NCBI GenBank assembly: GCA_965285935.1
Contig: OZ260663.1
Span: 45,880,001 to 45,944,000, forward strand
Length of the DNA: 64,000 nt
Source: Ophelia neglecta
Taxonomy: Eukaryota
Direction of reading: 5' to 3'
Made by a program: the position numbers and the translations under genes. Shown in pieces: positions 7,842-62,206 of this stretch. How positions within the stretch are numbered: position 1 is the stretch's first letter; each line of letters begins with the position of its first letter. The notes beneath the pieces are model-generated. The model was not told where the DNA came from and did not search any database. It saw only the letters and a program-made list of their open reading frames with translations.

Positions 7842-10800
7842 TCATACTTCTGTCACTCCTCCTGTGTTCCTCTCAGCAGCATGTGAGTTACAGTAGTATT
7901 TCTTGTGAGCGATGAAGGTGGAGAGATATGTAAACGAGATGTCACACTGCTTGCAGTACTTGAGACCATTTTTTTCCTCCTTGGCAGGGAGTGTTCTGTT
8001 GATGATATTGGCAGGACTGGGACTGAGAGGGGTAGAGGGTCGACTAGCTGATGACCGAGGGAGACTCGGGGCCTTGTCTCCGGCTGGGACAACGTTCTCA
8101 TTGACACTGACACTGTGAGGAGACAGAGACTTGTCCCTGCTCTCAGATTTCACCTTTCCAGACATACAGGTAATGGCATTCTCTGCTTTTCCCCTGTCTG
8201 ACTGTGGAGATAGAGCCTCTTCCTTCACCACTGTCTCCCTGGCCATGTATTCCTCAGATGTCTTAGCCCCCTCAGACTCAGATGCACTCCCATCTGAATG
8301 ATGATTCTGAACTCTTCTGTCCTTGTTGTCTTCTGAATTTAGGGGCTTCACCTCAATCTTGACCACAACAGGTTGTTCATCAATGTCACCACCAGTTATT
8401 TTTTTGTTCGATTCAGAGTTCTCAATATTGTTCACTTCATGCAGGAGTTTCACATGTCGCACCAGGTTGGCCTTGGTGTTGGTGATGTAGTCACATGTTT
8501 TACACACGTAAGTGTTCTCCTCCAGATGGGAACGCATGTGTAGTTTCAGCTTTGCTGCGTCCATGAATGAAGCATGACATTCTGTACAGACAAAGGGGCT
8601 TTCCTTCGGATGGATCATATGTTCTACCTTCTCAAAGCATTTTCTTGATCGTCGTCGCTTGTAAGGTTCATTCTTTAGTCGGATCAGTTCTGCTTCAAGA
8701 TCTACCACCAGTTTTTCATTAGATGGCTTTATTCGTTTGGGTATCAGTGGAGGTTCTTCATACTCTATCATGTTTTCATCTGTGAAAGTTTCTCCTGCAT
8801 CAATATGCATCTTACCATGCATTCTCATGCCTCGTACTGTATTGCCTCTATACCCACATGTTGTGCATTTATATGCTTTTGATGGAGCATGGGCTTTTAT
8901 GTGCTCCACAAGTCGATTGTCGCTTTGTGCAATGTAGTCACAATATGGACAGTGGTAGAGAGGGACATGCACAGATGTGCCTGTACAGTAGTGCAGTTTC
9001 ATCAGTCTGGAGGAAGTAAAGGAGTTATGACACTGACGGCAGGTCAGGCCAGACTCCATTGATGCACTCTCGTCTTCTGATGTCTCTGATTTACTCTTAG
9101 CTGATGTGGATGGACTACTTTCTTCACTGCGAGCTGGGCAGTAGAACTGCTTGTGGGCTTGCAGAGTGTCCATACTACTAAATTTGATTTTGCAGGGCAT
9201 GCAGTAATACTGAAGGAAACCATGTTCTGTGACGGGGTGCATCTCTGGGGTAGTTTTTCCCGAGTTAATCGGGCTGGGAACCACCCCCGGAGACAGAGAG
9301 TGAGCACTTGCCGGAGACCGAGAACCAGTTTCCACAGCACGACGAGGACTGATTGGAGATGTGGGCATGTAGCTCATCATTTGTGCAGGAGGAGTGGTTG
9401 GATGGACCTTGGCTTCCATCCCCCGAGGTGCACGTCTGCTAGCACAGTAGTGCTCTTTGTGTGCCACAAAGTTTTCATGCTTATAAAAGACTATGTTACA
9501 TTCCAGACATTTGCTGATGGCAGGAGCAGCACCACCTGAGGCAGCCAGAGACAGGGCCTGGGGTGATAGCATGACTGGGTGAGGTGAAATCATTGGAGCT
9601 GGTGGGGTGACTCTGGGCTCCTGATTACTGGGGGTCCTCCTCTGAGGTGACCTGATGGGGGACATACTGCCTACAGGAACTGGAGTCCTAGGGGTGGACG
9701 CTCTCGGACTGTCAATCCTAGGTCTCTCTGTCAGAGATTCATTCTTAATCTTGGGTCTCATTTTGTCTTCACTTGTCCTCTCAATAGATTTGATATCTTC
9801 GGTATTTTCTTTCTTTCCCTCCTTCTTACAGCTTAAATCAAGAGGTTTTTCCACCAGCTTACCAGAAGAACTAACGGCAGTCTTATTGATGTTGCTGTGG
9901 GCTTGGACCATGTTGGGTACTGAGTTTGGTAAAGGTTGTACCACAACTGCTGGGACATTGATAGACACATTTGCCAGACCATTACAAGTCATCATGGGTG
10001 CCGTCAGCACTACTGTGGCCTGTGGCTGCGAGGTGAGGAGACCAGAGGGTAAGATACTGGGTATTGAGTTTAATCCTGCAGAGAAAAATGGCATTGGCAT
10101 GCTCGGGTGTGGGGTGTTCAAAGCTACTGAGTATGGTGGCGAAATACTCTTGGCTGAGCCAGTGTCTGTTGGGTATGGTTTGATGCCTCCTGAATTTCTC
10201 CTTCTCTGGGTACAGTAGAACTCCTTGTGGCCAAGGAAGGTGGAAAAGGAAGAAAATTGGATGTCACAATCATGACAGTACATCTCGGATGGAGAGCCGA
10301 CATCCTCGTCAGAAGTCACCTCAGCAGGGACTGATTTTCTGTCCTCTGGTGGACTACCTCCTTGAGGAGATTTAGGCTCCCCACAGATGGAGGGTTCCTT
10401 GATTTCTTTCTCTGACTGCTGTGTGGTGATCTGCACTTTAACTGGGGGCTGTTCACTATCACTGCCACTTCGACTTCTTTCCCGATCCAAAATGGATCTT
10501 TTTCTGCTTATGGGTTCTGTAAAAAGAAATAAATAAAAGAAAAGTTATTATTTACTAACAAATATTCCAAGATATTAACCTACATCAGCTATCAAAGTGA
10601 AGTATATAAATATCAGCCTCACATGAAGAAGTCATTCTAATGACTCCTGACTACTACTTGTCACAAAAGAAGTGAGCACCTTTTGACTGGGCAGGGGGAG
10701 ACACTGATTTTCTGTCACTGAGTTCCATACAGACCATCACTGGCTTCTTAGCACAGTAATAAGTCAGGTGTGCCTGCAGCGTGTTGGGGCTGCTGAACTT

Positions 10801-13800
10801 AACTCCGCAGTACAGACACACATGGATTAGAGCTGCAAAGTAGGGAAACAAACAACATTATGACAAATGCTGATTGTCAGCTCAATCTATGAACTCTGGT
10901 CAGATGAAATGTATGATTACCAGCCTGACCTTCACTAACTAAGGGGATACACTATACTTCATGCAAGGAAAGCAAACAAGTAAAACATTGAGCATTTCTG
11001 TTCACTGCATCCTTTCATGCTGTTTAAACAATAGAAAAAGCTATAGTGATGTACACATGTTTCAATTTGATGGCATTTGTATATATTTTTCGTACAAATC
11101 AATACAATGAAACATTGATTAATCACAGCAAAACTAGCAATGTTTCATAGAAAAGCAGGTATGTTTGGAATGCACATAATCTTATCATTCACTATCTAAA
11201 TGAACCACACAACAATTAGTTATATGTTAATTTGACAGGTCCTTTCTATTGTAATCATGCCGACAACTAAGACAAAACAGGTCCATTCTAATGTACATCA
11301 AGTATCTAATTTAACATTTACAGCTTTCAGCAGGGAATTCATTTTCTTTCGTCTCAAATAAAAGAGGCAATGTGTCTGTTAATCCAATTGAAGACCCAGA
11401 TCATTGTATATACCAGTTCTCCAGTTTTTGGTATGGTGGAGTGCATATTTGAAATATTACTCAATTAACATTGAGGCCTGAAAGGGAGATTAAGGGGTCA
11501 GGAGACCTTGTTGAAGTCTGACACATTTCCCATCTTGGTGTGAACTCTTTCACAGCTTCATTGCTTCTATCTTGCCAATAATCCATCAGAAAAAGTTGAG
11601 AAGTATGTGAGCCAACCAGGATAGGATCTGACCTGATTATGAATTTGACCATCTGACCATGAAGATATCTGCATATGGTCCCTGCACTTGTGATAAGGAG
11701 CATTGGAAAAACAGAATGCTCATTATTCCTTAAATGGAATGTCAGAGGACAAGATAATGAATGATCGTCGGGCATGATCTTTAACCATTTTTAACGCGAT
11801 CATTGATAGCTTTTGCACGGAGTGTATTGGTAATTTATTTGGTAAGTTGCAGAGAAGTGAGCAGAATGGAACTCTCCATTTAACAAGTTCATCAGGCGTA
11901 AGGAGCTATAACAAGTGCCCGTCTTCCTGCCAACAACCTATGACAAAATATGGCCTCCAGGCCTACACCCTGACATCACCTTTTCTACAACTGTCGAAGA
12001 AAACCCTATAAATCATGCCCAACTAAAGAAATAATAACTGCTACAAGTATTAAACCAAGGTTTTCACCAGTCATATTATGATAGAGTGGTCATCAATTTA
12101 CAAGCCAATGATTTTCCACCATCATGAGTTCGAAGGCTGCGGAGAGCGAAGTCAGTTACAGATTGAGTGTCTCTCGTGGGGCCTGCTCTCGACAGTCTGC
12201 CACTAGATGAGGGCATTATATCTCAGCCGGACATTGTCAAACGGGCCAATTATAACAGTGACCAACATGGCTGGCCGTCACCTAGACATGACACTGTCTT
12301 AACCTGGTTGTTCACAGTCAATCTGAATCTGTCATCACCTTACAATGTGACATCAAATCTTTTAAAAGGACAATTATCACAACAGTACAGAAACAAATTA
12401 CACCGCGTGGCTACAAGACAAATTCTAAAGCCACAGTTAAACACATAACAATATGAAGTATAATATAGAACTGAATGTATAAACACCAATAACATCTGAA
12501 CACTCACGATAGGTGGGTGTTGGGGGAGAGACATCTCTTGGTTCTGGAGAGGGTGTGGTTTTCTTTGGAGCCAGCTCTTGTGAGTCCTTTGAGTGTGGTG
12601 TTTTAGGTGAAGATTCTGGTGATTTTGTGGTGCGGATAGCAGGCAAGACTGCAGGAACGTCTATGAAGTCCCTGAGGGAGCCTTTGTCAACACAGCTCTG
12701 AGGGCTCGAGAGCCTCATATCATCTACCTCCTTGCTTAGCATAGCCACCAACTCTACTTCTTCTTGTATGTCTTTTGAGATTTCACACCAAAGTGACCCA
12801 CTCTCTGTAATAATAACCAAAATAAACATGTATAAAATCACAAAATTGTATAGTAAAAGACTGACCTTAGATCTAGTGATGTTTGTCACTAGGCTATCAT
12901 AGGTGGTAAATCAATACATTTGTCTAACCAAAAAAGTATTGGGAGCTTTTTATTACATGCATTCTGTCACCGAACAATAGTCACGTGGCCTAGGATACAA
13001 GTTTTAGAAATTGCCAGTCAATGTGAGGTTGTAAAGAACAGATATCAACAAAAGTCCCTGAGCTATCACCAACAAAAACTCCTTCAATTTTGGGAGGCCA
13101 GGTCATAAATTCTAGGTTTTTTCTCAGCTATTTTATCGCACGCTGTGTGCTCCAGCAATAAAATAAGGCACCCAGGAAAATGAACACTTCATTTTTCTGA
13201 TCCGATTACTGGGGGATTTTGCTTGCAGAGTATCTCAGAGGGACCATTTAGCAAATAAAGGTGACAGCCGATGGGAAGTCGACAAAGACGATTGGAAACA
13301 CTTTGGGCGCGATAGTTCACGGCGAGTAAATGAAGAACCATCGTGGGGATTTGTCCGTTGAATCCCACACAATCTGTCTTGATTGGTTTGGGTTATCACA
13401 GCAGATGTCGTGCGCTGATCTCCTACACAACCATCACCGCGTGAAAAGAATGCCTCTGATTTATTAGTTCATCTCGCTATCACTGTTTGTGCGGGAGAGC
13501 TTTGGCAAAGTGGTGATCTTTTACACTCCCAAATGTGGCACATTCTTTGCAAATCAGCATGAAAGCCCAAATAGGCTGTGGACCAGGCAAAGCCCCAGGC
13601 GAGGTCCTATCTGGCGTTCAAATTAACATGTATTATGACGAACCACAGGCTTGGGTGAGCAGTGATAATGACAAATCGTTTCTTGCAATTAATCAAGGCT
13701 GATGTGGTTCATTACCTCAAACATTGATCAGTGCCCCTTTAGCACAGTATTCCCAAAGAAGCCAAAGCAACCATTTTTCTTTGGTAAGCAAACTTGCTTT

Positions 13801-16800
13801 GCATTCTATCTGCTTCACCTCACAAATTTTAATTCAAATGAAATTTTACACAGCAAGTCCTTACCACCAGTTGCTTCATATTATTGATTTATTATATATA
13901 TCTACCAAAAACAACATGTTATACAATGAACTCCTATGTTAATCCCGGCTGGGTTATAACTACTGAGAACTGACATCATTATTGCAGTTGGCTAGGTGGA
14001 TATTTATATTTATACATAATGGATATATTATATTTATGGCACATTTAATCTCTGGTTTAGATAAAGAAAAGTTTGGTTCTGTCTGTAAGATATGATATGC
14101 CAGCAATATCATTGAGTAAGGACATTTACTAACTATTCAGTCTTAGTGAACATGAACAGTTCCCAGTTCTTGTGGTACTAAAATTTAAACTTAACATAAA
14201 ACTGTGTTAAATTCAACACAACTGATAAACACCACAAACTCACCTTTTTGTATACATATATTGATGTTGCTGTTACTAGCATTGGTCGTGTTTCTAACCA
14301 ATTTCAGCCAGTGGCCTGCATTGCTCTCTACACTCAATGATAGCCTTTGTCCATCCAATACAAACTAAAAACATAACAAAAAACATTTACAATTATGTGT
14401 ATAGACAGACACTACTAAAATTAACTTCTTGGGTTGGAGAATACAATTCTATACATATGCTAGGGTCAAAATGAGTGAAAATGAGAATTATGATGTCATA
14501 GTGATGTCATCCCATTTACTGTGTATAGTGAATGGCAATGGAAGCCATAATGACATTTTTACTTAGACACAGGAAGTTAGTGACACACTTTTATTACTTT
14601 GGGCCCAGAGCGATAAGACAGGCGAAAGGCAATGATACACAATCTTGATGTTATAAACTCCACTATCATGCAAGACAAAAACTATTCGATGTCCATACCC
14701 CCAAATGTCTCAAAGTTTATACATGTCAAATATATTTCAGTCTTAAACAACTAATTGTAATCAATATAAGTGCAAAGTAAAGTATTGCACATTTTTAATT
14801 TTAATAGTCCTCTGTTGTTGTCCTACATTGTGTATTCTTTCTTGAAATTCAGACAGAAATAAGTTTCAAATAACAAATACTCTGGTGAAACGAAACTTGG
14901 TCAAAGCCATGAGTACACTCTATGTATATGTTTATAGTATTATTTTCACCCCAGTTATCGGACACTGATATGATACCCAATCAGCAAACATTTAATTTTC
15001 ACAGCATCAACACATTTCTGATCCCTGAATCAAGGAAATTTGAATACACTCATATATATCTTAACTTGAGTTAATCAGTTTTTATTTTGACATATAGATA
15101 ATCTATTCCACACAATATCGAGGTGAATACAGTATTACGTGTCAAAAAAGAATTTGATTAATCGATGCCACTAAGATTTTGTGCTGATGAAGATTAGCAA
15201 GAATGCCAGGTTGAGATGAGCTAGTAGTGTGGCTGGAGAGGTACAGGTGAGAGCTTTGGCAGCCCTGGTAGGTGGTCAGTGCCAGGTGTGATATACAAGA
15301 TCCAAGTATTAGATAAGCCACTGATAAGGTCATAATTCTCAAGCTGGCTTAAGGCTTGTGGAGGCAAGAGAGAGGAGAACAGGGCAGCACGGCAGAGAGA
15401 GCATCCATCTAGCCTATCACAATTGGGATAAAGGAGATATACAGAATGATGAATGTCTCTGTGCCAGATAGGTTAATGCTACGATTCCGCACTCAGGAAA
15501 ATACTGCTGATAACTTGAGAGCTCAGTGTGGATATGTCTGTCTGCCAAATCAATGTGCAGCCAGAATCACCGCCTCCCTGAGGTGATATCTAGCTTATTA
15601 CCTGCCTCCCTACCATATCTCAAGCTGAGAAAGCTATATTTGTGCTTGGTATCAGGTAGGATGCATTTTCATTATCTGCTTTCAAGTTTCTTCAACCTTG
15701 TGTTTGACTTGAGATAAGCTGGTTATAGGAATGGTCAAAAAGAACCCTCCAGAAACTTGGCAGCAGCTCCCAGCTCACTAAACATCTAACTCACTCAGAG
15801 AGAGGAAAGTGGCTTCCATTAATTTTAATGATTATAGTCTTTTCTTCAATATCTGATACGATAACTAAAGTCACCAGGAACACAAACAAACAACATCATA
15901 CCAAGATAGCAAAACCGAAATCAGAGACTGATATACCAAATCTGGGTCATTATTCTATCTGACAATATCAATGCTATTCCCCACGCATCTGTAAATCAAG
16001 CACACTTGCTGGCATTTTAGTTGAAGTAATAGTGTCTGATTATATGTCAAGCTATGAGACTAATTGCACTGAAGAGAAAGATTATAATGAACACCATTTG
16101 TGATAATCAAACTAACTAAACATACACAAGGGACAAAAAGAAAAATATTACAAATAGAGTATAAAGGCCTTCAACTGGAATGAAGTAAATTAAAGTAAAA
16201 CAAACAATGCTATCAGGTGAAGCATTTCTCAGATAAGAAGAAAAAAGAAAACAATCCCAAATGAACAAGTCTATGAAAAATAAATCTTGAGTAATACAAT
16301 GGTGGTACTGGTCCATGACCTATTGCTATTAAGTTATCAGAGAATAGATAATGCCTATCTTGATGACCTAGCTTTAATCAGCTTTTAGTGCAGATAAATG
16401 TCAGCTATCATAAAATTGTGCTATTATGGAAAGTTTTTCATTGAAGATTGTGTATATAAGACTATGCCTGTGGAGGATATGTCCCTTTGTATTAGTTAAG
16501 CTTTTAGATATAACAGGAGTAATGCTGATCTAATGATAATGTTGATAAAAGACACAAACTTAAAAAACAAGTACAACTAACAAAAAGAATTCAGGCATTT
16601 CTTATTAGTTGGGAATGTTGTTGAATAAAAATTATCATGATATATTATGAATGCATTTCTTATTGTACATTTTTACTAGACAGATCAAGTAGTCATAAGT
16701 AGACACATGTACATTGTATTCCAATTGTTTTGTCCATAGACAACCTTAAAGTCACAGATAATATAAAATTGCCAAAATAAAGTATATGCAACAATAAATG

Positions 16801-19800
16801 TTTACCTCTATAATGCAGGAAGGTTCTCCCTCTTGTCCTTTGTTGAACAGACCACCTTTATATGGTCCAAAACTGCACCCTCGAGGCAGAGGGATTGTAC
16901 TGTAGACTCCGTATTCAAATACTGGATCATCTACTTCTCTTAGCTGAAGTACATCACAAGGTAGGCAGTGGTTCCTTGAGATCTCTTCTATCTCATCCTC
17001 AGACTTTTCTGAAAACAAAATTCAACAATAAGTTGACAATTAAAACATATCACTACACTCCTAGATCATACTTTGAATGAAGAACTATCCTTGAAGTATT
17101 TACTAGCAAAACTCCTGGTAAAACATACTGGTGGTTTGCACTACCTGTTTAATATATTGCAAGCCAGATCTTTGTCTCTAGTGTGTGGGCAAGGCAAGTC
17201 ACCTGTTGTCTGGACTTGAAGGTCCTAGGGGGATCTAATATTACTGCCACAGATCACTGATAACATATACATATACTTATCATAGCTTATCAGATCCTCA
17301 ACAATCTAACCAATGTCAAAAGTCAACCTTGTGTCAGAAACAGAGTCATAAACATGTGACTGATAATAACAAAGGGCTCTGGACTCTTTAAGAAACAGGC
17401 TGGTTTAAAAAGAGATTTAATATGATTGCATAATACTGGCCCAAGTCCCTTAGTTTGAAAGGTTAGTGTAATTAACTAATTACAAATCTTCTTTAGAATT
17501 GTTGACACAAACTGTCCAGAACTCACTTTTGCACAAAACGGTATGAATGTAGATATTTTTTCAAAGGTTTTACTTCCCATGAAACGCTTTAAAATATTTT
17601 TATCTTAGAAATTATTCAGTGTAAAAAATGTGTATGCAGCTTACATCTAGCAATGTAGCCATTAAACAAATTTGAATTGTATTCATAAAATAACACATGG
17701 TTAAAAACATGAATAAGTTCTGAGCCCCAATGACAAAATTATATGATGCATATCACTTGTTATTTGATAGTGTAATCTACTGCTAGAGGTCTGATAAGTT
17801 CAGGAAGATATCTAGGATAAAATTCATGCATTATCAAGATCAGCACAATCTCATCAATAGCAGTCTGTCACCAACCATTTGAAGATAGGCCAATGCACAA
17901 TTTAAATTATCAAAGGACAATGGAAGGAATGTCCTGGAAGTAAACGGCCATGAAATCATCCAAATTCAAGAACCTGACTTATTGACACATTGCTGTTTTT
18001 ATTTGAGTTTAACCTTTGCAGACAAATGTCCTAAGCACTTTAAAATTATATCAGCAAACATTACATTATGACAGAAGGCACAATAAAACATAGTTCAGAA
18101 AAAGGCAAAAAGTCGCTAACTATATCAACTGTTAGCCACTTTAAACTCATATATTAACTGGAAAAAGTTACTCTTAAATGTCATAGGCCAACATGCACTA
18201 CAGACTGTTGTAGTATATTGCTTTGTCATAAAATAAATGACCTTTAATCACTTAGTTTATTCTCTTTGTATTTTGTCTAAAATTTATCACCTATATCCTT
18301 ATTTTACTCAAGTTCCTTTAAACAGAGACAATAAATGTATGTACCACATACAAATGCCACCTTTAAATATAGGCAAACTCTTCATGGCTACTCATTGGCC
18401 AACATGGTGATAAAAAAATAATGCAAACATTTTTTCCCCAGCTTTCATGACAAAGTTCCCTTAGCTTAGGCTAGATGATAGTGATAAATGCAATCAAGCG
18501 GCTATCAATTTTGGTATTGTATGACTAGAAAACTGGACAATGGTGTTATATGATCTTATACAACCAGTATCTTTATGGCAAGGTAACAGGACTGTAAAAA
18601 GTCTGTCAATAAGAACTGTATGAGCTTTTAGTATACAAGGACTGAGAGCCAAACAAAAAGTCTATCTAAAAAATCAGCATCGAACACCTCAGAAATATTG
18701 AACCTTTCCTTATTTTTTGTATGAATTTCTCATTTGTGCAATTAGAATTGTAAAATATTTCTTGATAATTTATTTTTGAAATTAAACTCTACAAAACAAT
18801 ATATATTGCCTACATGAATGTTTAGTCAATATCACACAACACTGCCTCTGCAATGCCAGGAAATATCTGTATAATGTTCCTATAGTTGCTCAAAATCTGT
18901 TTATCTTAGTGGGTAAGGGAAAGAAGAGATCATAGTTTATATCCTCCTAAATATACTAAATCATTTTGACAGAACTCTAAACCCAGAAAGTAGACAGACA
19001 CAGCTTGCTCCAGGAAGCTGTCAAATCAGCTTAAGAGGTAGATGTATACAGGTATATATGAATAATTACACTTGAAATCTGATGCACAACAAATCTTCCC
19101 CATATAACATTATATATATAGTAGGTTCCCTTAAGTCTAGCCAATCTAAAGTACAAATCAATATGACAGCACTGAGCAGTTAAAGGTCATAATTCTTACA
19201 TGCATTGTAGTAGTGAACTTATTCAGTTAAATGTAAAAACAAAGTGTATGGTTAAAAATACAGTGACTACTAAGGTGCTATACCAGCATGATGCATGGTG
19301 CTCTCGTAGGTTACTTTTTATAAATGTATGGTGAAATAAGCTGACACATTTTCGATATTTGTATATTTAATTGCCAAGTTGGGTTTTTCTGACATACTTT
19401 TAATTCTAACTCAAATAAGAAATTCCATGCCTAAGGCTGCAAATACCCTGTTCAAAGCAGGAGTTATGGTTTAAAAAAAAAACATATAAAAGGTTTTTTT
19501 ACAAACAAGCCATCAAGTGAGCTGTAAATTCTGATATCTTCCCAGCTATTCTGGAAATCCAGAACATATTGGGGCTATCAGTTGGTTATCTGCAGTAGAT
19601 AATCAAATGGTTTGGGTCCTGTCTCTCCCAATGCATTTATGGTTACAGGTAAGTTTTACATCTTTTATCTAGATAAACAGAAAACTACTCTCAGATGAAA
19701 AGAGAAAGTTGCCAGGCATGTCAGTCCCTGTTTGCATTACAGGAGATGAACAATTGTGCCACACACAATCTAGTGCATAATGAAATCACTAGACAACTAA

Positions 19801-30558: not shown

Positions 30559-30780
30559 GTTGAGCCGTCTGCTCGCGTGCCACTGACCGACTACAGCTTA
30601 TACAGATGTGCGCAGTGACCCGAGTTCTTGGCTGAAATCATTTGCGCCGTGACCTGCGCCTCGCTCCCGTCGGGTGGTGGTATGCAAGATGGTGGCCTGT
30701 TAAGGAGGGAAAACACCGTATATTTTGACAATAAAACGCATATTAACAATTAGTTGTTGGTGAATATTTCCCGCTGGTAA
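30559..30780. promoter_or_regulatory. CpG-rich bidirectional promoter between FOG (minus) and the zinc-finger gene (plus), including the probable non-coding exon 1 of the ZNF gene
   Basis: Local CpG enrichment over ~29600-31140. FOG ATG at 30558. YY1-like CAAGATGGTGGC at 30685, NRF1-like TGTGCGCAGT at ~30607, and a plus-strand donor CTG|GTAAGC at 30776/30777. Confidence 0.6.
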
Positions 30781-39655: not shown

Positions 39656-39755
39656 GCAGCCAGGGACTGGCTGCAGGTCAATGCCAACTTTCAGAGAGTG
39701 AAATCTAATAGTACAGGAGGGGCTTAGTGTACTTGTTATTAGTTTTCATTACCAG

Positions 39756-50697: not shown

Positions 50698-50700
50698 TTA

Positions 50701-52698
50701 TCTATAATTATATTGCAGTAGTGCAACATGGATTTCCCGGTTCCTCAACGAACCGATGTCCCTGAAATCTTCACCGATTGTTGCTGAAACTTCTGTGGTT
50801 GTACAAAAGTATGTAAGATTGCGGTGCGCTGTGCGCGTTTTGCAGTCAAAAATCTTTTGCATTTTGGGAAAATCTGTCGTCTGTATCATTTGCAGCCATT
50901 CTTGATGCCATATTTGATGTTGTCAAGCAACAGCAGTGCATCATGGGAAATACTGCCTCCATTCAACATGACACGCTGATTACTGATAAGATTCAGAGTG
51001 AGCCTGTTTTGTTGACACAATAGATTAACATCTAAAAAGGAGGCTGATCTAAGGGGGAAAGGGGGGGGGGTGTAACCTAGCAGTCTCATGCAATGCTGAT
51101 GTACTGATAAAATGCAGAGAAACCTGTTTTGATGTCACGAGAGATTAACATGTAGATGACAGTATAAAACTAGACTTAGGCTACAGAGGGAGGAGGGGGG
51201 CAGCTGGGGGGGGGGGGTTAGGCATACAGCACAAAAAGGGGCAGGCAAGGGGAGGAGGGTTATCTAAGGGGGGAGGAGGGGGGAGGGGGTTTACATAGCA
51301 CCCTCATGCAATGCTGATGTACTGATAAAATGCAGAGAAACCTGTTTTGTTGTCACAAGAGACTAACATGTAAATGACAGTATAAGACTAGACTGAGGCT
51401 CCAGAGGGGGAGGGTGGGGGGTGGGGGTGGGGTAGGCATACAGCACAAAAAGAAGCAGCCAATGGGAGGAGGGTTATCTAAGGGGGAATGAGGGGGGGGG
51501 GGGTAGCCACGGGAGGGTTAGGCTTACAGCACAAAATGTGGCAGCCAAGGAGAGGAGGACTATATGAAAGGGAGGAGGGAGGGGGGGGGGGATAAAAAGT
51601 CCAGTTTGCGCGGTTCATGAACATGATTTGTATGTTGGAGTGGGAACCAACAGAGCACACCTAACCCGTTTGTTTTGTTTTTAGGCCCCTGTCACCCTAT
51701 TCAAAATTATGAAAGGGGACTTATGGTAGTGCACCAGCGGTTCGGGTTGTTTAGTTATTTGATCCAATCATTCGGGGTGGAGGAAGCAGACTTAATAAAA
51801 CAGACCTGTCCGGATTGTTCTGTTATTGGCCCATATTTAGGAACCAATATTTAGTATATTTTTCTCTTTCAATACTTTTTTTTAGTGAATTAATTGGTCT
51901 ATAAGTTGGCGTACGTATAGAATTGACAATGACAGCTTATTGGCCGTATGATCCGAAATCAATCTATTGTCAGGCATATTGGGCGTTTGATTCCCAGCGT
52001 TCAATCAAGGATCAGGCACAGTGTCACTAACTGAACTGAAAGATGGTCTGTGTGATTATTGAGTGATATTGAAGTGGTCGCACCGTAACTTATAGAAATA
52101 AAAATTATCGTCATATTTTATAGGTCTTTGACAAGAATTTTCTCTCCCATTTGAGAAAAATAAAAAACACTGAACAGTTTTCTTTTGCGATTCTTGAGTC
52201 TTATCCGACATATTTTGTCAACTTAGAGAATTTATAGCAACTAAACATGAATTATTTTTAGCGGCTATATAGCTGTAATTTATGTTGTGATAGTAATGTG
52301 CTGCAAAACCACTTTACACTCTTAAGGCTTTAAAGAATCTGGATCACCTTGGAAATGAACCCTTCTTTTTATGAAATTTCAAAGCATCATGTGTTTCACC
52401 TCAGATACCAGAGTGGGCTCTGGGGAATGGAGTGTATATATATATACATATGCAGATACAAAATTGAGAATGTTGCATGAACATAGCTGGCCGGTGAAGC
52501 AGTTATAATCAGGGCAGTAGTACGTTGTCACAAAGCAGTCACATTTCAAATGTTGAAACCAAAGAAAACTGCCTTTATGAGACAGGTGGTGCTGCTAAAT
52601 AGTTACTATGTAGGCCTACACCATTTTGTCTGTGTATTTGGTTGTTTCTTATACGGATACTTTCCTCCACTGAGGACTTTTCCACGGGTCACTGCTAG
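50701..52698 (+). mobile_element. Non-autonomous Helitron, copy 2 (~2.0 kb), head-to-tail with copy 1
   Basis: Same termini as copy 1: A|TCTATAATTATATT...CTGAGGACTTTTCCACGGGTCACTGCTAG|T. Separated from copy 1 by TTA only. Confidence 0.8.
50980..51595 (+). repeat. ~218 bp G-rich internal tandem repeat of Helitron copy 2 (about 2.5 units)
   Basis: CTGATGTACTGATAAAATGCAGAGAAACCTGTTTTG occurs at 51096 and 51314, with G tracts between the units. Confidence 0.75.
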
Positions 52699-53380: not shown

Positions 53381-53539
53381 ACCCTAAATTTTCATACTGC
53401 TTTGTGACCCTATGAAGGTCCGTTTATTTAAAACGGGACTTCTGGTTTTATTCCTTAGAAAACCTCATGCTATGTAGCTTATTGAATCTCAGGTTGTGCT
53501 ACCTTGTTATAACTTCCATGGTTTTTTTAGGCATTTTTA

Positions 53540-54010
53540 TATTGTTAACAATACGAAAACAATAATAAACAATCAATATTAAAATAAAACAAAACACCAG
53601 GGTATAAGTGTCGAATTTTCGACAGGCAAGCCTGCCTTCTTCTGGACTTTATTTAAAATGAAAGGTTTATATTGACTATACACAATGCCTTAGTGACCCT
53701 TCCCCTGTGACGCTATACTGTGACGTCATACTCAGCTATTGTTACCTTAATCCACCGAGCAAACATATCCCTTCCTCATGCTACCCATCACACGGTGGAT
53801 TTATTATACAGGTTGCTGAAAAGATACCCATTGGACCGGGCAGTCGCTGAAAAGATACCCACTGGACTGGGCAGTCCTCAATATTAAGTTAGAAAATAAT
53901 CAAAAAGACGATCCAGTCCAACAAAACCCGGAAAAAGTGCCTGGGCAAAATTCTGGCCTCCTTCCAGTATGAGTGCTTCACAAGAATTATAGTTAGATCT
54001 CTAAATAATA
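53540..54010 (-). mobile_element. Penelope-like retroelement 3' remnant with a minimal hammerhead motif
   Basis: Second copy of the 22.2 kb repeat, on the minus strand, with the hammerhead-like core at 53650-53607. The upstream frame DLTIILVKHSYWKEARILPRHFF...LNIE weakly resembles a decayed GIY-YIG C-terminus. Includes a 31-bp tandem duplication at 53815-53876. Confidence 0.55.
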
Positions 54011-54563: not shown

Positions 54564-57500
54564 TCACTGGTCCGTGTCGTTGATGTCGTCCGAGTTCGGA
54601 TGGACTTCTTCCTCAGGCATGCCCTGAGAGATGTGAATGGTCTCGCCGTTTTCGTTCACCACCTGGATGGTATCAGACAGCCGCTGGGACATGGAGACAG
54701 CCACCTGAAGGCCATCATTTCCATCTCCACCAGGGTGGAACTGCTGAAAATATACAACATCAACCGCAGAATTAGATCAACATATCAGGATATGGCCTGT
54801 CTAGCCAGACTGTTTTTGGAATGGTTGCCTAAATCTGTATGTGTTTCAGTGATTTTTATACTAAATATGTACAGTAGAATTGTAGGAACCCCATATAGTT
54901 AATATCTTTGTGTAATTTGACTCACCATGACTTGGTCTCCCTGTAGTATCTGTATCTGGTGTGTCTGCTGTAGCTGGGCCACCTGTTCAGGTGTGGCGTG
55001 CAGCACCTGGATCTGTCCTCCAGCTCCGTGGAGAAGTTCAGCTGCCGTCGCCCCCGACATAACACCGGCTTGGCTCATGTCCACCTCCGCCTACCAAGAG
55101 AAATTGTATTATAACCAAATATGATGGTGTTTGATCTGATTCAAGGAGTGTAGTGACAGAAGGCAAAGGTGGTAACAAACAAGGACACCTCGGGCATAGA
55201 ATAGGTGATAATGCCTCTATACCTATCGGTATTCCAATAGATTTGGTTTTACACTTCTCCATAAGTGTTTAAACATGAACACAGCACTTACAAACTGATT
55301 TAACACAACACTGAAATTGATTATCAAAATGCATATTTTGACTTACACAATCAATATTTATTAACTCAATCATTTGTACTACAATAAACAGACTTTGCTA
55401 ACCTCTTGTATATGGAGCTCTGATTCGTCTTGCTGGAGGGAATCGTCTGACTGACCACCAATCTCGTGGACTTGGTGCACAGTGCCGCCGGGGCTCTGCT
55501 GGACATGGAGGTAGGTTGGTGGGGCCTTACCTCGGAACGCCTTCACAGTTAAAGGGAGACCTCGCATTTTTCGACGGAATGCTGTCCTACACTTGGAATC
55601 TATATTTTGCTTAATTCGATGCCAGTCCGTTTCGGATACACCAAACTTATGTATTAAATGACCTACAGAGAAAAACAAAATAAGGCTGATTAAAGCAAAA
55701 TATAGATACCAAATACAACATGAAACAAATTATATAGAAAGCCAAGGCTTCCAAATTGTTATTAGTATCGAGATATTGAAAATAAAGACTTACATCTGAT
55801 GCCATAGATCATGAGTGGGTCAAGTTGTTTCTTGCCATGCTTGCCCAATCCTGACAGGTTGGAGGATGCTTGAGTCTCCCGGTCAAACAAATAGTCAAGC
55901 AAGGCAAGAGCCATCTTCTCGGGAGTTCTACAGTTTGAATGTATGTGCAACAAATCGCTGAAATGTTAAGTGAAAAATAGATTGTTAATAAGTCAAACAT
56001 TTCAGGATTGTAGTGTAACATATTTAGAGTATACTGCCTTGTAAATCATAATTCCTTATTAATTATGGATATAACTGACCTTGGAGTGATTGGAATCCTG
56101 ACACGCATTTCAGGGTTGTTTTCATCGCCCAGCCAACAACCATCAGGGTAATCCTCTAAAAATAGAATGTACTTGAATTGTATTATTTATAATATTCCAT
56201 AGCATTATTTATTAACAATGATTTGGTTGGGATTATATTTCACATGAAATTGATGCATTTTTCAATATGTATGGAGGGCTGAGGAAGGGAGAGCAGAACC
56301 ATCGAGAAAGCAAACTCTGATTAAATGGGGGGGGGGGGGGGGGGGATCCTATATCAACACACTATCTATATTTATACTATCATATATTAAACCTTTGACA
56401 CATTTATCCTGAAGAATCCCTGCTGTAATGCACTATTTATGGTTACAATGATGAAATAACATTATATACATGTCCCGGGGTAAAACTGTAAACAATTCAG
56501 CACTAAAAGGGTAATGGTCAAATCTCAAATAAGGGTTACATTTTTAAGAGAAACAATTTTGAAGCTCTAAACCAGGTTTCAATATCAAACATAAACAGTT
56601 AAAAAAATCAAACTTCCTCTCATTAAATTATTAAGAACATTAAGGAATAAATAAAAAGCAACCAATAAATTTCCATTGAATTGACCCTTTGACTTGATAT
56701 TTCAATGGCAGTACTAGGAGTGAACTCTGCCTGCACCACACACTACATCAACATGTGAGTAGACTGATCTGTTGGGGGACCTAATCCACATGTCATACAC
56801 TGCACTGATTTATATGTACCAAGTAGATGGAGCGCAAAGGTTTAGCTGGTCTTAATGAGTGCAGCCATTGTCAAAGTCTCACCTTCTGTGTTCAAAGTAA
56901 TGAGCGTGACATTTGATCCCAAATTCTGTATGTTAGAATCAATGCTGTCTGGACTCAAATTACCAGGCCCTGCAAAAATGTTTAGAGAACTTGATAATGA
57001 TAACCATATACATCTAGTACTACATATAAGATGGAATGTATCTAGACATAAGCAGTTACTACCAAGGAATGATTAACAAAATACAAAAGCATATTGCAAC
57101 CAGTACATTTAACAGAAACAGTTGTTTTCTATAAACACAAGGTATGCTACATGCCCAAACAAAACACTTAATATCATTAGATACTTTCAATTCTTTGATC
57201 AATCTTTCTATTAGCAAGCTCCAAAAATTATACCGACAACACAGATAGACGAAACACTTTACAAAATAATATATTCTTTTAATATCAGGCAGGGGTTTTT
57301 TCTTTTAAAATTTAAATAAAAAACTACTAAATGCAAAGTGCTCAGAACCTCTTTGCCAGTGATTTGCTGGGTTGTATGTCCCAAATGGTTAAACTAGATA
57401 GTAGTCTATGTGGATCGAAGTCGACTTGAACAGTCGAGCGACGCCTAGCGTAGGTCGGACGGATGACCCGACTACATAATGCTTCCAGACCCTTCAGGGC

Positions 57501-60500
57501 GGAGGCATAAAAAGGTTCAGGACATTTTAAATGTTAGGGAGTTTCATTGTTTTGGGCCTTTTAACAATCTTTGCTCGATTGGTGCACTTATTTTGGTTTT
57601 GCTTCACTAGATATCTTCATTTCTTACTTTTTCTTGCACAATAGCTACATAGGTGACTTCCATTAAGCAATCTATATAACTCCCTATGATTCATGGTGGT
57701 ACAGTTGTCATGAAAAATGAGCTGTTTTTGGTGTACATAGCCCAGGCACAACCAATGTCTACATGTGCTGGTCAAGCAAAGGGAAAATTATCATAACATT
57801 TGTATCAAACCATGCTGTCACAACATGCCCTTAGTCACAAGGCATTTTGCATATAGCTCGGTGACAAAAATGATCAGACAATTGTTCACTGGTCTTTATT
57901 AATCAGAAACTGTACATTTCAGTTAGAAAATATCCAATTTTCAGCAAAAACAATATTTTCAACATTTTCAATTTGATGTCATTACTTGACTCCTTGCACT
58001 TACATGTATATGACATGCTATTTCAGTGATCAAACATTTGGTAGTCTATCTTGCCCTATCAGACCACTAGACGGGCTTGAGTTTTTGCAGTTACAGGGTA
58101 AAAATTGATCTAGGTTACTATAATATGTATATCACAGTATATGTCAAATGGCCACCCCTCACCAAAATAAATGATAATCGCCATGTGACATTGCCGAAAT
58201 GCATATGTTCTAAGATATGAGAGGAATCAAATTACTGTTGTCATGCCCACATGTCCATAGTAAAGGGGCCAAAGTAATAGCACAGTGCACAATTACCTAC
58301 TGAGGTACTTGTACCATGATATTATGCTATGGCTCTTATTCATAGTAGGTGAGCAATAGATAGGCTGAGGGTCCATACGAATTTAACAAATTATAATTTG
58401 TCTTCACAAATTTTAAGTTTACCTTGTCTATAATCAAGAACTTGGATCGCCCCTGATCTTTCACCAGAAGCATCTTTCAATAAACTTCTTTGTGACCCTA
58501 TTCAAAAAATGAAAACCCTATAATTAAAATTTTTGAATTGCACCAAATAAAATCCTGCTTTTTTTTGGAAATTAATGGCTTCAAAGAGGTCAGATGCACC
58601 TTTTGTTACAGATATTCATGGTTGAACGTGTGGAAGTGAGTTTCAGTAGCCCAAGTTGCTAGTTCTGGTGCTAAACAAATAAGGATGTTGCAAGTCTAAA
58701 TTCAACTATTGTAATACTAGACACTAACATAATGATCTTTAAAATAATACTAGTGATCCAGAAACCTTTAAAGAAGGCTGAGTATTGATGTTTTTATACT
58801 AATTGTTGCTATTATGTGGATTGTAGGTATATAATAAATTATAGCAGACAAATGTAAACCATCACATTTAACACCAAAAAGCAAAGCATTCATTTAAACT
58901 TAAACAACATATAATTTACAAATACAGCAACTAAAACTAAGGCAAATAAAAATAAAAGGAAAATATAAATAAAATATACAACTTTAATAATCTATTATTT
59001 AATCTATTTTAGTGACTAAATGAGCATAGTCGGGTAACTAGTTCTATCCAAGACATTGCGCTGTCAATTATAGTGAATCATTTCAATAACAAAAAAATGG
59101 CCTCACATGCTAATACTTACCCCCAAGAATGCCAGCCAAAGCCTCTTTTGAATCCTCATCTAAGGATGAAACGTGGTGAAATTAAGAAATTTTGTTAACA
59201 ACAATCAACTTTCCTAACTTGCATTTTGTTCCATTTAAAACAAATTAAATGAAAGCCATACTACAAATCAAGAATGCAACTTTGCAAAAATTGTCTTAAT
59301 GCGGATTTCGAAAGTAATCAGATTGATACACAATAAACACTAAATGTGATGGCTAAGTGATGTACAAGTCTTTTCCTGCCCCTACGATGCCGCTAACATT
59401 AGGTTTAGATTTGGAAATTAAAAGAAAGCCAAACAAGTTACCTGTTGTCAGTTTATTTGACGGGATACCCACAATGACAGCATTACTCCTTCTCCCAGTG
59501 CTTCTAAAATAAAACAATAGAAATATACATAAGCTTAATGTATCAAGTCTATGACAAGCTTATATAACAACATAAGCTCACAATTCCTCTCATTCTCACA
59601 GTAAATTTCAAGGCTTGCTAACTATTAAAGTCATAATGGTTGACTAGCCCTGTTCACAAAAAATGCAGACAAGTTAATTTCCACATTAAGGGAATCCATG
59701 TAGATGTTTACAGTAATGTCTAGTCTCAACTATACTCATCTATATTGGGAAATGAAATTAGACTTACACAGTCTTTGTACCAGGCACTGTTTGCTGGCCA
59801 ATCATGCTTGAGTTCTGTCGAATGTGGCCTACCATCTGTTCCACCTTTTCTTCGAGGAACTTTGTCCGCAAACTCACCGTTTCCAACTTGTTTTCTATGG
59901 CATCTAGTCTCAAGCATATTGCTTTGTTTATATTGAACAATATTTGCTGGAATTTGAAAGTGAAGCATCCAATTTTTAATGTTTTACTGGAATAATGTAA
60001 ACAAGACTTTTACATCAGAAACATCTCTTAATCAACATGATTTGAGTAGGTTTTTAATCCACATGCTATTAAATTATTGAGTATCATGTCATACCAATAT
60101 CAAAATAAAAGTGAAATTTAAAGTCCTGAACTAATTTTAGATTTGTGGTTTTCTCAAGAACCCTTGTGCTCTTCCCAATGCTTTCATGTGTAACAGGAAA
60201 CATGCCTAATAATACACCACAGTCCAAACTGACGCAATACACTTTTTTTCTTAAACCATTATCACAACCGAAGACATGCCAAAACAGATTTTCACCAGAA
60301 CAAATGTTTGCTGCAAAGTGACTTGAGTTAAGGAAATTGGTAAGTTACCTTAATTGATAGCGTTTGATTCTGATCCAGGCTCTCCTCCTCTGCTGTTTTC
60401 TGCCGTTTTGCAGGAGGTTCTCCTATCCCAGATGGCGAAGTTGATATGTTCAGGGTTCCATCGGCTAGTAGGAGATCTTTAAAAGAAATTTGATTTTGAA

Positions 60501-62206
60501 ATAATACTTCACATAAATTTTGCATTGAATTACCAGTATACAGAGTTCCCACATTCCATGACTTTTAATCAATTTTCCAGATCTTTTTAGCTCTGGAGCA
60601 ATGAATGAGAAGTTTTGCTGATTTTTTAATTTAATAGACAACAGCTACTTTTTACTGGTAAGATATTAGCTATCAGATGAGACATATATGAAAAATACAA
60701 TTTATTGTTTAAAAAAACATTCAGTGGTCTTTATTGTAAAAGTTTGTGTATGATGACTTTACCGCAAACACTGAAACAAGATACACTTTTAGTATTAATC
60801 ATGGCATTTATGCCTTCCTAGTATTTCTTTTACACATCTAAATTGATTGGATACCAAATAATTGGTCCAAGTATGCACTGGGACCCCAAATTTACATTAT
60901 AATAAAGACTTTTTAACCCCATGTTTCCAACCGGAAGTGCCAACCCTTATTAATCACCATGATAACTTAAAAAGCTTCATCCCACACTGGCATATCAGTC
61001 TGCAGGGATAATTCTGCTACGCAGGATTGCAGCATTGATTTTAAAAAATCCCCCATTCCCCATCCCATAGGCACGGGAAAAGTCAGGGATGGAAATTAGC
61101 ATTCGCCCGTTCACCATTGGCTAATAAGTTTAAGACAGGGCTAATAAAGTGTCCAAACTATTAGCCCTGATGGCTAACAACATTTGACAGATCATTACCA
61201 ATAAAATGTCCTCAATATTAGTGGTCAAAATTAGTGGCTGCCTTTCTCCACAAATAAAGCAACTATTCAGGCCCTTTATAGTTATAGAATGCTCAATTTA
61301 AAGGGCCAATTAAAACAAATGTATGTATGTGAACATGCCAAACACAGTCTTCAATTATTGGCTAATACAATGTTTTCAGGGCTTATACTTTCCAGGTGTT
61401 ATTAGCCTAGATGACTAATGCTTAATTTTTGTTAATTTCTGTCCCTGAAAGTGCGCTTCGTTTCCCAGGGTAAGACCATGTGTAAAGACTGTGCGAAGTA
61501 GCACCCCGGGCTTCTAGTGTGTCACATAGTCCTGAAATTTGTCGATACCAATACCCTATCATAATCAGAGGACACCCGCCACTGTATACATGAACACGAT
61601 GCGCACGAAAGTGGATTCCGGGTTTTTACAAGGCCAGGTTTTGCTCGCGATCTCTAATGGGACACTACTACCTTAGTACTACTGCTGCCACTGCTGATCT
61701 CACTTCACATATCACATTTTCTTTGCGGGGCAAAGTATGCCACCAAAAATGTGTCTTAGGCCTGACAAAGGCCAGAAAGTGCTGTCTACACTTGGAATTT
61801 TAAACAGAATAATTTATATGTGTGATTTTTCAACATTTTATTTATTCGAACATCAAACGGCATATTATAGACCATTAGAATATGACTGACAATGCATCCC
61901 CCATTGCCTCGAAAAATGCCCCATTGACAAGGTCAGAGATGTGGGCAAATACCCCACTCTGGCCACAACCTAGAATTATCCCTGAGTCTGGTACAAGAAA
62001 AATTCCAGGACTTCCGAGGATTTTCGGGAAACCTGTGCATACAAATACTTACAATCATTTAATGTTTTTTAATACTTGCCGTTCATTTGATATATAGTCT
62101 CACCTTGCCCCTGGATGGGGGTGATATGTACAGCATCGACCAGAACCTGGGATGTCATTCCATTGCTATCAGTTACATTTGACACTGCTCCTGACACTGA
62201 GCTCAT
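54564..62206 (-). CDS. BANP: Protein BANP / SMAR1 (BEN-domain DNA-binding protein), ~480 aa, 11 coding exons
   Basis: Exons (minus): 62206-62104, 60476-60349, 59946-59768, 59503-59442, 59159-59121, 56969-56883, 56155-56080, 55957-55794, 55662-55403, 55090-54926, 54743-54564. All introns are GT-AG with consistent phases, total 1443 nt. Diagnostic BANP segments are the coiled coil SIKQILFNINKAICLRLDAIENKLE, NVTLITLNTEEDYPDGCWLGDENNPEMRVR, and the BEN domain NCRTPEKMALALLDYLFDRETQASSNLSGLGKHGKKQLDPLMIYGIRCHLIHKFGVSETDWHRIKQNIDSKCRTAFRRK. A probable non-coding exon 1 ends at 62997 (donor GTAAGT). Confidence 0.95.
57391..57513 (+). mobile_element. Short Helentron-associated (HINE/DINE-like) element fragment in a BANP intron
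   Basis: Begins AAACTAG, has a GTAGTC/GACTAC subterminal inverted pair and a CGGACGGA microsatellite seed, and ends in the hairpin ATGCTTCCAGACCC-TTCA-GGGCGGAGGCAT followed by an A run. It is CpG-rich relative to the intron. Confidence 0.45.
61084..61447. mobile_element. MITE with CAGGG...CCCTG ends (364 bp), hAT-like, within a BANP intron
   Basis: TIRs CAGGGATGGAAATTAGCA and TGTTAATTTCTGTCCCTG (15/18 match). Subterminal GGCTAATA/TATTAGCC repeats. Flanked by a direct AAAGT repeat (61079-61083 and 61448-61452). Confidence 0.75.

What the first reader, a model, noticed from the sequence alone, without database searches (positions are those of the whole stretch)
7842..62206. BANP - large zinc-finger gene - FOG linkage mirrors human 16q24.2: candidate ancient genomic regulatory block
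Seen: BANP and FOG are co-oriented with BANP upstream, ~24 kb apart, and a zinc-finger gene encoded almost entirely by one large exon lies directly next to the FOG 5' end. Established: human 16q24.2 has the order BANP, ZNF469, ZFPM1, with BANP upstream of and co-oriented with ZFPM1, and ZNF469 essentially a single large coding exon. Inference: this BANP-FOG microsynteny may date to the bilaterian ancestor and be held together by FOG enhancers spread through the neighbouring genes (see the GATA clusters). Differences from human are the opposite orientation of the ZNF gene and the intervening UNC93-like gene.
Basis: partly seen in the sequence, partly recalled or inferred. Interest (0 to 1): 0.8.

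Follow-up and report, generated by a model that had tools for sequence, protein, structure and literature searches.

The report
Old BANP–FOG gene neighbourhood, partly conserved
The window really holds BANP, an UNC93-like gene, a big one-exon zinc-finger gene and FOG in a row. BANP and FOG also lie close together in a tubeworm, an oyster and humans, but the link is broken in several other animals, and nothing here shows that FOG enhancers hold it together.

Summary
Observation confirmed. On the minus strand lie BANP (CDS 54564-62206), an UNC93-like gene (about 40430-45256) and FOG/ush (CDS 7842-30558). A 1468-aa, 21-finger C2H2 gene in one ORF (33214-37620, plus strand) sits head-to-head with FOG. 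From the BANP stop to the FOG ATG is 24.0 kb.

Interpretation partly supported. BANP and FOG share a chromosome in all nine chromosome-scale spiralian assemblies compared. They are close in the annelid Ridgeia (89 kb, same order and orientation) and in the oyster Saccostrea (146 kb, at most 2 protein records between, but divergent). In human the order is BANP, ZNF469, ZFPM1. They are 16.3 Mb apart in the nemertean Lineus and on separate scaffolds in Lingula, Lottia and Paralvinella. Locus tags put them hundreds of genes apart in three other molluscs.

Two head-to-head pairs are better conserved:
- FOG with the 21-finger ZNF, in annelids and Lingula.
- BANP with a KDELC/POGLUT gene, in annelids and the oyster.

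ZNF469 orthology is not supported by architecture and could not be tested by sequence. GATA-site enrichment is confined to FOG's own introns, here and in four other spiralians from four phyla, so the regulatory-block mechanism has no support. Best reading: a slowly decaying ancestral neighbourhood.

The parts
7842..30558 (-). FOG/ush (ZFPM) coding region. Approximate exons: 30520-30558 (ATG, MSRRKQSHPKSIK), 16803-17015, 14218-14364 and 12515-12865 (PR-like domain and linker), 10693-10848 (first CCHC finger), 7845-10516 (large exon; stop codon 7842-7844).
   Evidence: Pfam CCHC_ZFPM2 1e-29. Orthologs at 31-42% identity. Collinear tblastn of eight FOG proteins. N-terminal motif. PLDLS CtBP-type motif at 9831-9845 and 4 CCHC + 4 C2H2 fingers in the large exon.
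10858..30489 (.). FOG introns with strong WGATAR enrichment. The densest 1-kb stretches are 15901-16900, 27101-28100 and 29301-30300.
   Evidence: 130 sites against 70 expected, z 7.1. No enrichment in ZNF, UNC93, the spacer or BANP. The same intronic enrichment occurs in the FOG genes of Lingula, Lineus, Saccostrea and Ridgeia.
30201..30700 (.). CpG-rich island over FOG exon 1; probable promoter.
   Evidence: CpG o/e 1.04 against a window background of 0.2-0.5.
33214..37620 (+). 1468-aa C2H2 zinc-finger gene in one ORF, head-to-head with FOG. It has 21 fingers laid out 1+2+2+3+1+12.
   Evidence: Collinear orthologs in Lamellibrachia, Ridgeia and unnamed assemblies. A collinear ortholog also sits divergently upstream of Lingula FOG.
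40430..45256 (-). UNC93-like MFS gene (approximate CDS span), convergent with the ZNF. Open frames holding its exons: 44636-45319, 44145-44405, 43626-43958, 43378-43671 and 40433-40657; a further match at 41718-41786.
   Evidence: Pfam UNC-93 36.8 bits and 18.9 bits. tblastn/tblastx matches to the annotated UNC-93 gene that follows the ZNF in Lamellibrachia.
48533..52648 (.). Repeat-rich spacer between UNC93 and BANP: a unit of about 2.0-2.16 kb present twice, with internal repeats of about 217 nt.
   Evidence: the repeat finder families D1-D10.
54564..62206 (-). BANP coding region. Approximate exons: 62206 (ATG) to about 62075, within 60331-60564, 59806-59979, 56884-56958, 56064-56156, 55792-55959, 55403-55693, 54926-55090, and 54567-54776 (stop codon 54564-54566).
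   Evidence: PDB BANP BEN domain 1e-26 and 1e-16. Pfam BEN. tblastn of nine full-length BANPs. 185 family representatives in the exhaustive search.
63018..63130 (-). BANP promoter / non-coding first exon. A block of about 110 nt is conserved in Ridgeia, Saccostrea and Lineus and ends at a GT donor. It lies inside the strongest CpG island of the window.
   Evidence: blastn. Alignment A1 with invariant CATGCGCA, CTTTCTCGC and GACGCCATTATCG blocks. CpG o/e 1.24 at 62701-63200.
63678..63959 (+). First coding exon of a KDELC/POGLUT2-like gene (Filamin + Glyco_transf_90), head-to-head with BANP.
   Evidence: tblastn hits to the gene annotated with those Pfam families directly upstream of BANP in Capitella, Ridgeia and Saccostrea.

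Best explanation
The window comes from a spiralian, most probably an annelid. It carries a remnant of an old gene neighbourhood that decays slowly and unevenly. Read along the minus strand, the order is KDELC (opposite strand), BANP, UNC93-like, ZNF (opposite strand), FOG.

Shown:
- BANP and FOG belong to one conserved linkage group.
- They are still within 24-146 kb, with at most 2-3 genes between them, in this genome, in a siboglinid annelid and in an oyster. In human they are consecutive but for ZNF469.
- The arrangement is not fixed. The oyster has the KDELC-BANP unit flipped relative to FOG, and several other spiralians have separated the two genes.

Inferred:
- The stable units are two head-to-head pairs, FOG with the 21-finger ZNF and BANP with KDELC, probably because each pair shares a short promoter region.
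- FOG's GATA-responsive control lies in its own long introns, not in the neighbouring genes.
- The wider BANP-FOG proximity is therefore inherited and only weakly constrained, if at all. It is not a single regulatory block centred on FOG.
For: - Gene identities.
- Same chromosome for FOG and BANP in Saccostrea, Tegillarca, Sinanodonta, Patella, Mercenaria, Mya, Dreissena, Pinctada and Lineus, judged by identical longest-contig sizes.
- Ridgeia: FOG 138252-150995(-) and BANP 239790-247817(-) on one scaffold. The ZNF carries the accession next after FOG's.
- Lamellibrachia: FOG exon 1, ZNF and UNC-93 in the window's order and orientation.
- Saccostrea: FOG 45286032-45301499(-) and BANP 45447512-45458547(+), with KDELC directly upstream of BANP. 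The XP numbers leave two records between them. The chance of two genes lying within 146 kb on a 69.7-Mb chromosome is about 0.4%.
- Lingula: a collinear 21-finger ZNF lies divergently upstream of FOG.
- The KDELC-BANP divergent pair is present in Capitella, Ridgeia and Saccostrea.
- GATA-site enrichment occurs only in FOG introns: z 7.1 here and z 4.5-8.8 in Lingula, Lineus, Saccostrea and Ridgeia intron 1. It is below z 1.5 in ZNF, UNC93, the spacer and the BANP genes.
- Human order.
Against: - Only about 10 kb of flank could be read per locus. Distances in Capitella, Owenia and amphioxus are unknown beyond that.
- The mollusc locus-tag distances (159-696) assume tags follow gene order; this was not verified.
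- Scaffold separation in Lingula, Lottia and Paralvinella gives only a lower bound on distance.
- WGATAR counts are a crude proxy for enhancers. Other factor sites or distal elements inside BANP or UNC93 were not tested.
- The compared species are too distant for non-coding alignment to say much.
- Retention in three phyla could still reflect real constraint that was relaxed in some lineages.
Confidence: 0.6

Rival explanations
1. Genomic regulatory block. FOG enhancers lie inside or beyond BANP, UNC93 and the ZNF, so breaks between them are selected against. The block dates to the bilaterian ancestor.
For: - Proximity is kept in an annelid, an oyster and human.
- The interval upstream of FOG is gene-poor: at most two protein records in 146 kb in the oyster and 89 kb in Ridgeia.
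- FOG is a developmental cofactor with long introns.
- The ZNF-FOG pair is conserved across two phyla.
Against: - The linkage is broken in Lineus (16.3 Mb) and in Lingula, Lottia and Paralvinella (separate scaffolds), and probably in three other molluscs.
- Order and orientation differ in the oyster.
- GATA enrichment is absent from all neighbour genes and is kept in FOG introns even where BANP is far away.
- blastn found no conserved non-coding element outside exons and the BANP promoter.
Confidence: 0.2
2. Coincidence on a conserved chromosome. BANP and FOG merely belong to the same ancestral linkage group. Their closeness here and in human is chance, found by looking for matches after the fact.
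For: - Chromosome-level linkage is universal in the sample, which raises the chance of near neighbours.
- The genes sit at opposite ends of the Lineus chromosome.
- Matching orientation in annelid and human has roughly a 1 in 4 prior, and the oyster does not share it.
Against: - Closeness in the oyster was tested only after the hypothesis was fixed, and has about 0.4% probability on its chromosome.
- The same accompanying gene, KDELC, flanks BANP in annelids and the oyster.
- Other 16q24 orthologs sit next to FOG or BANP in other spiralians: APRT in Lineus, an RNF166-type RING gene in the oyster and a DEF8-like gene in Capitella.
Confidence: 0.2

Closest known systems
Human 16q24.2 segment BANP - ZNF469 - ZFPM1
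   Same: BANP and a FOG-family gene are close neighbours, with a large single-exon C2H2 gene directly beside the FOG 5' end (order from PMC7349372; ZNF469 single exon). BANP lies upstream of FOG and is co-oriented with it (the human orientation is from my own knowledge).
   Different: - The ZNF here is inverted. It has 1468 aa and 21 fingers, against 3953 aa and 8 mostly C-terminal fingers in ZNF469.
- An UNC93-like gene intervenes.
- The scale is 24 kb here against several hundred kb in human.
- KDELC flanks BANP here but, from my own knowledge, not in human.
- Sequence orthology between this ZNF and ZNF469 was not tested.
Conserved ancestral microsyntenic pairs and genomic regulatory blocks (Irimia et al. 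2012, PMC3514665)
   Same: Unrelated genes are kept near each other across phyla, one of them a developmental regulator. Head-to-head pairs are the best conserved class in that survey, as are the FOG-ZNF and BANP-KDELC pairs here.
   Different: - BANP and ZFPM are not named in that paper's main text, and its supplement is not held.
- Close BANP-FOG linkage was seen here in three major lineages only. That survey's 595 pairs were each conserved in at least four of 11 lineages.
- No regulatory elements were found in the would-be bystander genes.
GATA-factor control of FOG/ush expression
   Same: Dense WGATAR clusters in FOG introns fit GATA factors regulating their own cofactor. This is described for Drosophila ush and vertebrate FOG genes (my own knowledge, not checked in the library).
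   Different: Here it is only a motif count. It is conserved in five spiralian FOG genes, counting the window's. No binding or expression data exist.

Membership tests
FOG / ZFPM / U-shaped | CCHC GATA-binding zinc fingers (Pfam CCHC_ZFPM2) | tested here: met
   1e-29 with four stretches in the large exon. A fifth CCHC finger lies in exon 10693-10848.
FOG / ZFPM / U-shaped | N-terminal MSRRKQSNP-type (NuRD-binding) motif, PR-like domain and PxDLS CtBP motif | tested here: met
   MSRRKQSHPKSIK at 30558. PR-like exons are collinear with orthologs that carry FOG1-like_PR/PRDM2_PR. PLDLS at 9831-9845.
BANP | BANP-type BEN domain, with the rest of the protein collinear with known BANPs | tested here: met
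   PDB 'Protein BANP' chains at 1e-26 and 1e-16. Exons are collinear with nine full-length BANPs.
UNC-93 / MFS | Pfam UNC-93 above the curated cut-off | tested here: met
   36.8 bits against 22.9 on exon 44636-45283. The subfamily (UNC93A, UNC93B or MFSD11-like) was not resolved.
ZNF469 orthologs | Coding region in essentially one exon, lying next to the FOG-family gene | tested here: met
   ORF 33214-37620 lies 2.6 kb from the FOG ATG. The orientation is opposite to human.
ZNF469 orthologs | Protein architecture: about 3950 aa with eight C2H2 fingers, mostly C-terminal | tested here: not met
   1468 aa and 21 fingers in a 1+2+2+3+1+12 layout shared with Lingula and annelid orthologs, compared with the description in PMC12226416.
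ZNF469 orthologs | Sequence orthology (reciprocal best hits, or a tree) | not tested
   The word search only sees proteins of 807-2569 aa, and it even missed the Lingula ortholog.
Genomic regulatory block | Target and bystander genes kept together across distant lineages | tested here: inconclusive
   Kept in the window, Ridgeia, Saccostrea and human. Broken in Lineus, Lingula, Lottia and Paralvinella, and probably in three other molluscs.
Genomic regulatory block | Regulatory or conserved non-coding elements of the target lying inside or beyond the bystander genes | tested here: not met
   WGATAR enrichment occurs only in FOG introns. blastn found only exons and the BANP promoter. The tests are weak: one motif, and very distant species.
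Genomic regulatory block | One chromatin contact domain centred on the target promoter | not testable with these tools
   Needs Hi-C, 4C or ATAC data.

The most novel reading that the evidence does not exclude
The KDELC-BANP and ZNF-FOG pairs are what remains of a bilaterian-ancestral block equivalent to human 16q24.2-q24.3 (BANP, ZNF469, ZFPM1, RNF166, APRT, DEF8). In this reading ZNF469 is the inverted, much-diverged positional ortholog of the spiralian 21-finger ZNF, and the core of the block is held by FOG's long-range regulation.
Probability: 0.15. Interest if true: 0.6.

Novelty: new member of a known kind. Interest (0 to 1): 0.38.

Why it matters
- If the linkage holds in more phyla, it adds a documented example to the catalogue of ancient microsyntenic pairs.
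- It would give a positional handle on the origin of ZNF469, a human disease gene with no known invertebrate relative.
- The conserved GATA-rich FOG introns are concrete candidates for an ancient GATA-FOG feedback circuit that can be tested in annelids or oysters.
- As it stands this is an ordinary case of partial synteny conservation, not a surprise.

Tried and rejected
- Literature: no paper in the library links BANP with microsynteny. The supplements of Irimia 2012 and Touceda-Suárez 2020 are not held.
- Rfam: nothing in the window.
- One look-up was lost on a Lineus FOG isoform that is not on record.
- A strong tblastx match between the Owenia and Saccostrea flanks turned out to be a reverse transcriptase.
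- No conserved non-coding elements were found in FOG introns or between the genes by blastn.
- The vertebrate hits of the ZNF search overlap only the finger cluster, in many registers, so they are generic and were rejected as orthologs.
- Spliced gene models were searched exon by exon by reference.
- No human contig was fetched, saved or compared.
Full report
**What is in the window**

The 64-kb window has no N, is AT-rich (GC about 0.37) and is CpG-depleted apart from a few islands. I mapped five genes.

- FOG/ush lies on the minus strand.
  - Its large exon 7845-10516 scores 1e-29 for the ZFPM2-type CCHC finger. It carries 4 CCHC and 4 C2H2 fingers and a PLDLS motif.
  - Smaller exons lie at 10693-10848, 12515-12865, 14218-14364 and 16803-17015. 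They align collinearly with eight FOG proteins from annelids, a brachiopod, a nemertean, an oyster and arthropods.
  - The first coding exon starts at 30558 with MSRRKQSHPKSIK.
- A 1468-aa C2H2 protein is encoded by one ORF, 33214-37620, on the plus strand. It lies 2.6 kb from the FOG ATG and points away from it.
- An UNC93-like gene lies at about 40430-45256 on the minus strand.
- A repeat-rich spacer follows.
- BANP lies on the minus strand with its CDS at 54564-62206.
  - Two exons match the solved BANP BEN domain at 1e-26 and 1e-16.
  - The remaining exons were placed with nine full-length BANPs.
- The first exon of a KDELC/POGLUT2-like gene lies at 63678-63959 on the plus strand, head-to-head with BANP.

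BANP stop to FOG ATG is 24.0 kb.

**Source organism**

The closest named relatives of the FOG and ZNF proteins are siboglinid and alvinellid annelids: Ridgeia, Lamellibrachia and Paralvinella. Identity is only 34-40%. The organism is a spiralian and probably an annelid, but this is not proven.

**How the searches were done**

- Spliced genes were searched exon by exon, by reference. The step of joining exons into a model protein and searching with it was left out.
- Exon-sized queries cannot find full-length BANPs in the word search, and the claim stands or falls on where BANP lies in other genomes. I therefore used the single exhaustive search on the 67-aa BEN exon.
- I then used a full-length mollusc BANP from that result for the last word search.
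- No human contig was fetched.

**Linkage in other species**

| Species (group) | BANP-FOG relation | Calls |
|---|---|---|
| Saccostrea, Tegillarca, Sinanodonta, Patella, Mercenaria, Mya, Dreissena, Pinctada, Lineus | Same chromosome in all nine, judged by identical longest-contig size | 8, 25 |
| Ridgeia piscesae (annelid) | One scaffold: FOG 138252-150995(-), BANP 239790-247817(-). BANP upstream and co-oriented, 88.8 kb apart. The ZNF ortholog has the accession next after FOG's. KDELC lies divergently upstream of BANP. | 30-34 |
| Lamellibrachia (annelid) | FOG exon 1, ZNF and UNC-93 in the window's order and orientation | 14, 21 |
| Saccostrea echinata (oyster) | FOG 45286032-45301499(-), BANP 45447512-45458547(+): 146 kb apart, transcribed away from each other. 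KDELC lies directly upstream of BANP, so between the two. The XP numbers leave only two protein records between FOG and BANP. | 37-39 |
| Lineus longissimus (nemertean) | 16.3 Mb apart on a 19.2-Mb chromosome. BANP's neighbours are unrelated genes. | 36, 40 |
| Lingula, Lottia, Paralvinella | Different scaffolds | 8, 25, 30, 42 |
| Tegillarca, Patella, Sinanodonta | Locus tags differ by 159, 433 and 696. This suggests wide separation, but tag order was not verified. | 8, 25 |
| Capitella, Owenia, Branchiostoma floridae | Nothing FOG-, ZNF- or UNC93-like within 10 kb of BANP; distances beyond that unknown | 27-29, 41, 44 |
| Human (literature) | Listed gene order is CA5A, BANP, ZNF469, ZFPM1, ZC3H18 | PMC7349372, |
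| Chicken (literature) | The same three genes fall in one chromosome-11 GWAS interval | |

Relative to the window, the oyster's KDELC-BANP unit is flipped. Two genes falling within 146 kb by chance on a 69.7-Mb chromosome has a probability of about 0.4%. This test was made after the hypothesis was fixed.

**What is better conserved**

Two head-to-head pairs are more stable than the BANP-FOG link.

- FOG with the ZNF. In Lingula a 1387-aa C2H2 gene sits divergently upstream of FOG, with 1344 aa in one exon. It is collinear with the window's ZNF: 57% identity at the N-terminal finger, 27% in the middle, and 43% with E 4e-95 over the C-terminal cluster. It has the same 21-finger layout, 1+2+2+3+1+12.
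- BANP with KDELC. The pair is shared by the window, Capitella, Ridgeia and the oyster. It is absent in Lineus and amphioxus.

A block of about 110 nt just upstream of BANP (63018-63130) is conserved in Ridgeia, Saccostrea and Lineus and ends at a splice donor. It lies in the window's strongest CpG island. I read it as the BANP promoter and non-coding first exon.

**ZNF469**

The published description is a single-exon gene encoding 3953 aa with eight fingers, mainly C-terminal. The ZNF here shares the single exon and the position beside FOG. It does not share size, finger layout or orientation.

The word search could not see proteins of ZNF469's length, and it even missed the Lingula ortholog. 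Its silence about vertebrates therefore means little. Orthology is neither shown nor excluded.

**Regulatory-block idea**

- WGATAR sites are enriched in the window as a whole: 268 against 204 ± 15.
- The excess is confined to FOG's introns: 130 against 70, z 7.1. There is a marginal excess in the 2.6 kb upstream of FOG (z 2.0).
- ZNF, UNC93, the spacer and BANP are at expectation.
- The same pattern holds in other phyla. FOG introns give z 4.5 in Lingula, 8.4 in Lineus, 8.8 in Saccostrea and 4.5 for the Ridgeia intron-1 region. BANP genes, ZNF genes and the FOG-ZNF intergenic stretches all stay below z 1.
- Lineus keeps the GATA-rich introns although BANP is 16 Mb away.
- blastn between the window and all fetched loci found only exons and the BANP promoter.

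So nothing found here places FOG's control elements in its neighbours. These are weak tests: one motif and very distant species.

**Verdict**

The BANP-FOG proximity is inherited rather than accidental, at least since the common ancestor of annelids and bivalves, and it is compatible with a bilaterian origin given the human arrangement.

It is not a rigid block. Order and orientation vary, and the link has been lost repeatedly in slow-evolving lineages. The most economical reading is a slowly decaying ancestral neighbourhood containing two tighter promoter-sharing pairs. The regulatory-block mechanism and the ZNF469 equivalence remain unsupported hypotheses.

This is a new example of a well-known kind of phenomenon and is of moderate interest.

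Noticed in passing
window 63018-63130 (-); L005:8210-8288, L008:9820-9931, L006:9243-9346: A non-coding block of about 110 nt just upstream of BANP is conserved between the window, Ridgeia, Saccostrea and Lineus. It has invariant CATGCGCA, CTTTCTCGC and GACGCCATTATCG stretches and ends at a GT donor. It is probably the BANP core promoter plus 5'UTR exon. From memory, the motifs resemble NRF1- and YY1-type sites.
   Followed up: partly
window 63678-63959 (+): First exon of a KDELC/POGLUT2-like gene, head-to-head with BANP. The same divergent pair exists in Capitella, Ridgeia and Saccostrea, but not in Lineus or amphioxus.
   Followed up: yes
window 10858-30489; L011:10100-40650, L009:10100-23650, L007:10100-22400, L004:1-10000: WGATAR sites are strongly enriched in FOG introns in five spiralian genomes (z 4.5-8.8) and not in neighbouring genes. 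This suggests an old intragenic GATA-to-FOG regulatory input.
   Followed up: partly
L009:28213-29596; L008:24835-31036; L003:1-1718: Orthologs of other human 16q24.3 genes sit next to FOG or BANP in other spiralians. APRT is directly downstream of FOG in Lineus (PDB match 6e-19). A RING + Di19 gene of the RNF166 type lies downstream of BANP in the oyster. A C1 + RH-domain gene (DEF8-like) lies two genes from BANP in Capitella. The last two are judged by Pfam content only.
   Followed up: partly
window 48533-52648: A unit of about 2.0-2.16 kb occurs twice in tandem (87-97% identity), with internal 217-nt and 101-nt repeats and G-rich runs. It lies in the spacer between UNC93 and BANP.
   Followed up: no
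window 22056-22227 (-) and 53662-53847 (+): The same ORF-like sequence (KVYIDYTQCLSDPSPVT...) occurs in a FOG intron and in the UNC93-BANP spacer, in opposite orientation. It is probably a dispersed repeat.
   Followed up: no
window 201-700 and 1401-1900: Two CpG-rich patches (o/e 0.92 and 1.07) lie downstream of FOG with no recognisable coding exon. They may be the promoter of a gene that lies mostly outside the window.
   Followed up: no
(L011:1111-6713): The word-indexed protein search did not list the Lingula ZNF ortholog, although local tblastn gives E 4e-95. Blanks from that search for this ZNF family are therefore not evidence of absence.
   Followed up: yes
L002:4185-4637 and L007:33553-34005: The flanks of Owenia BANP and Saccostrea FOG share a reverse-transcriptase fragment (RVT_1, 9e-22). 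It is a retroelement, not a shared neighbour gene.
   Followed up: yes
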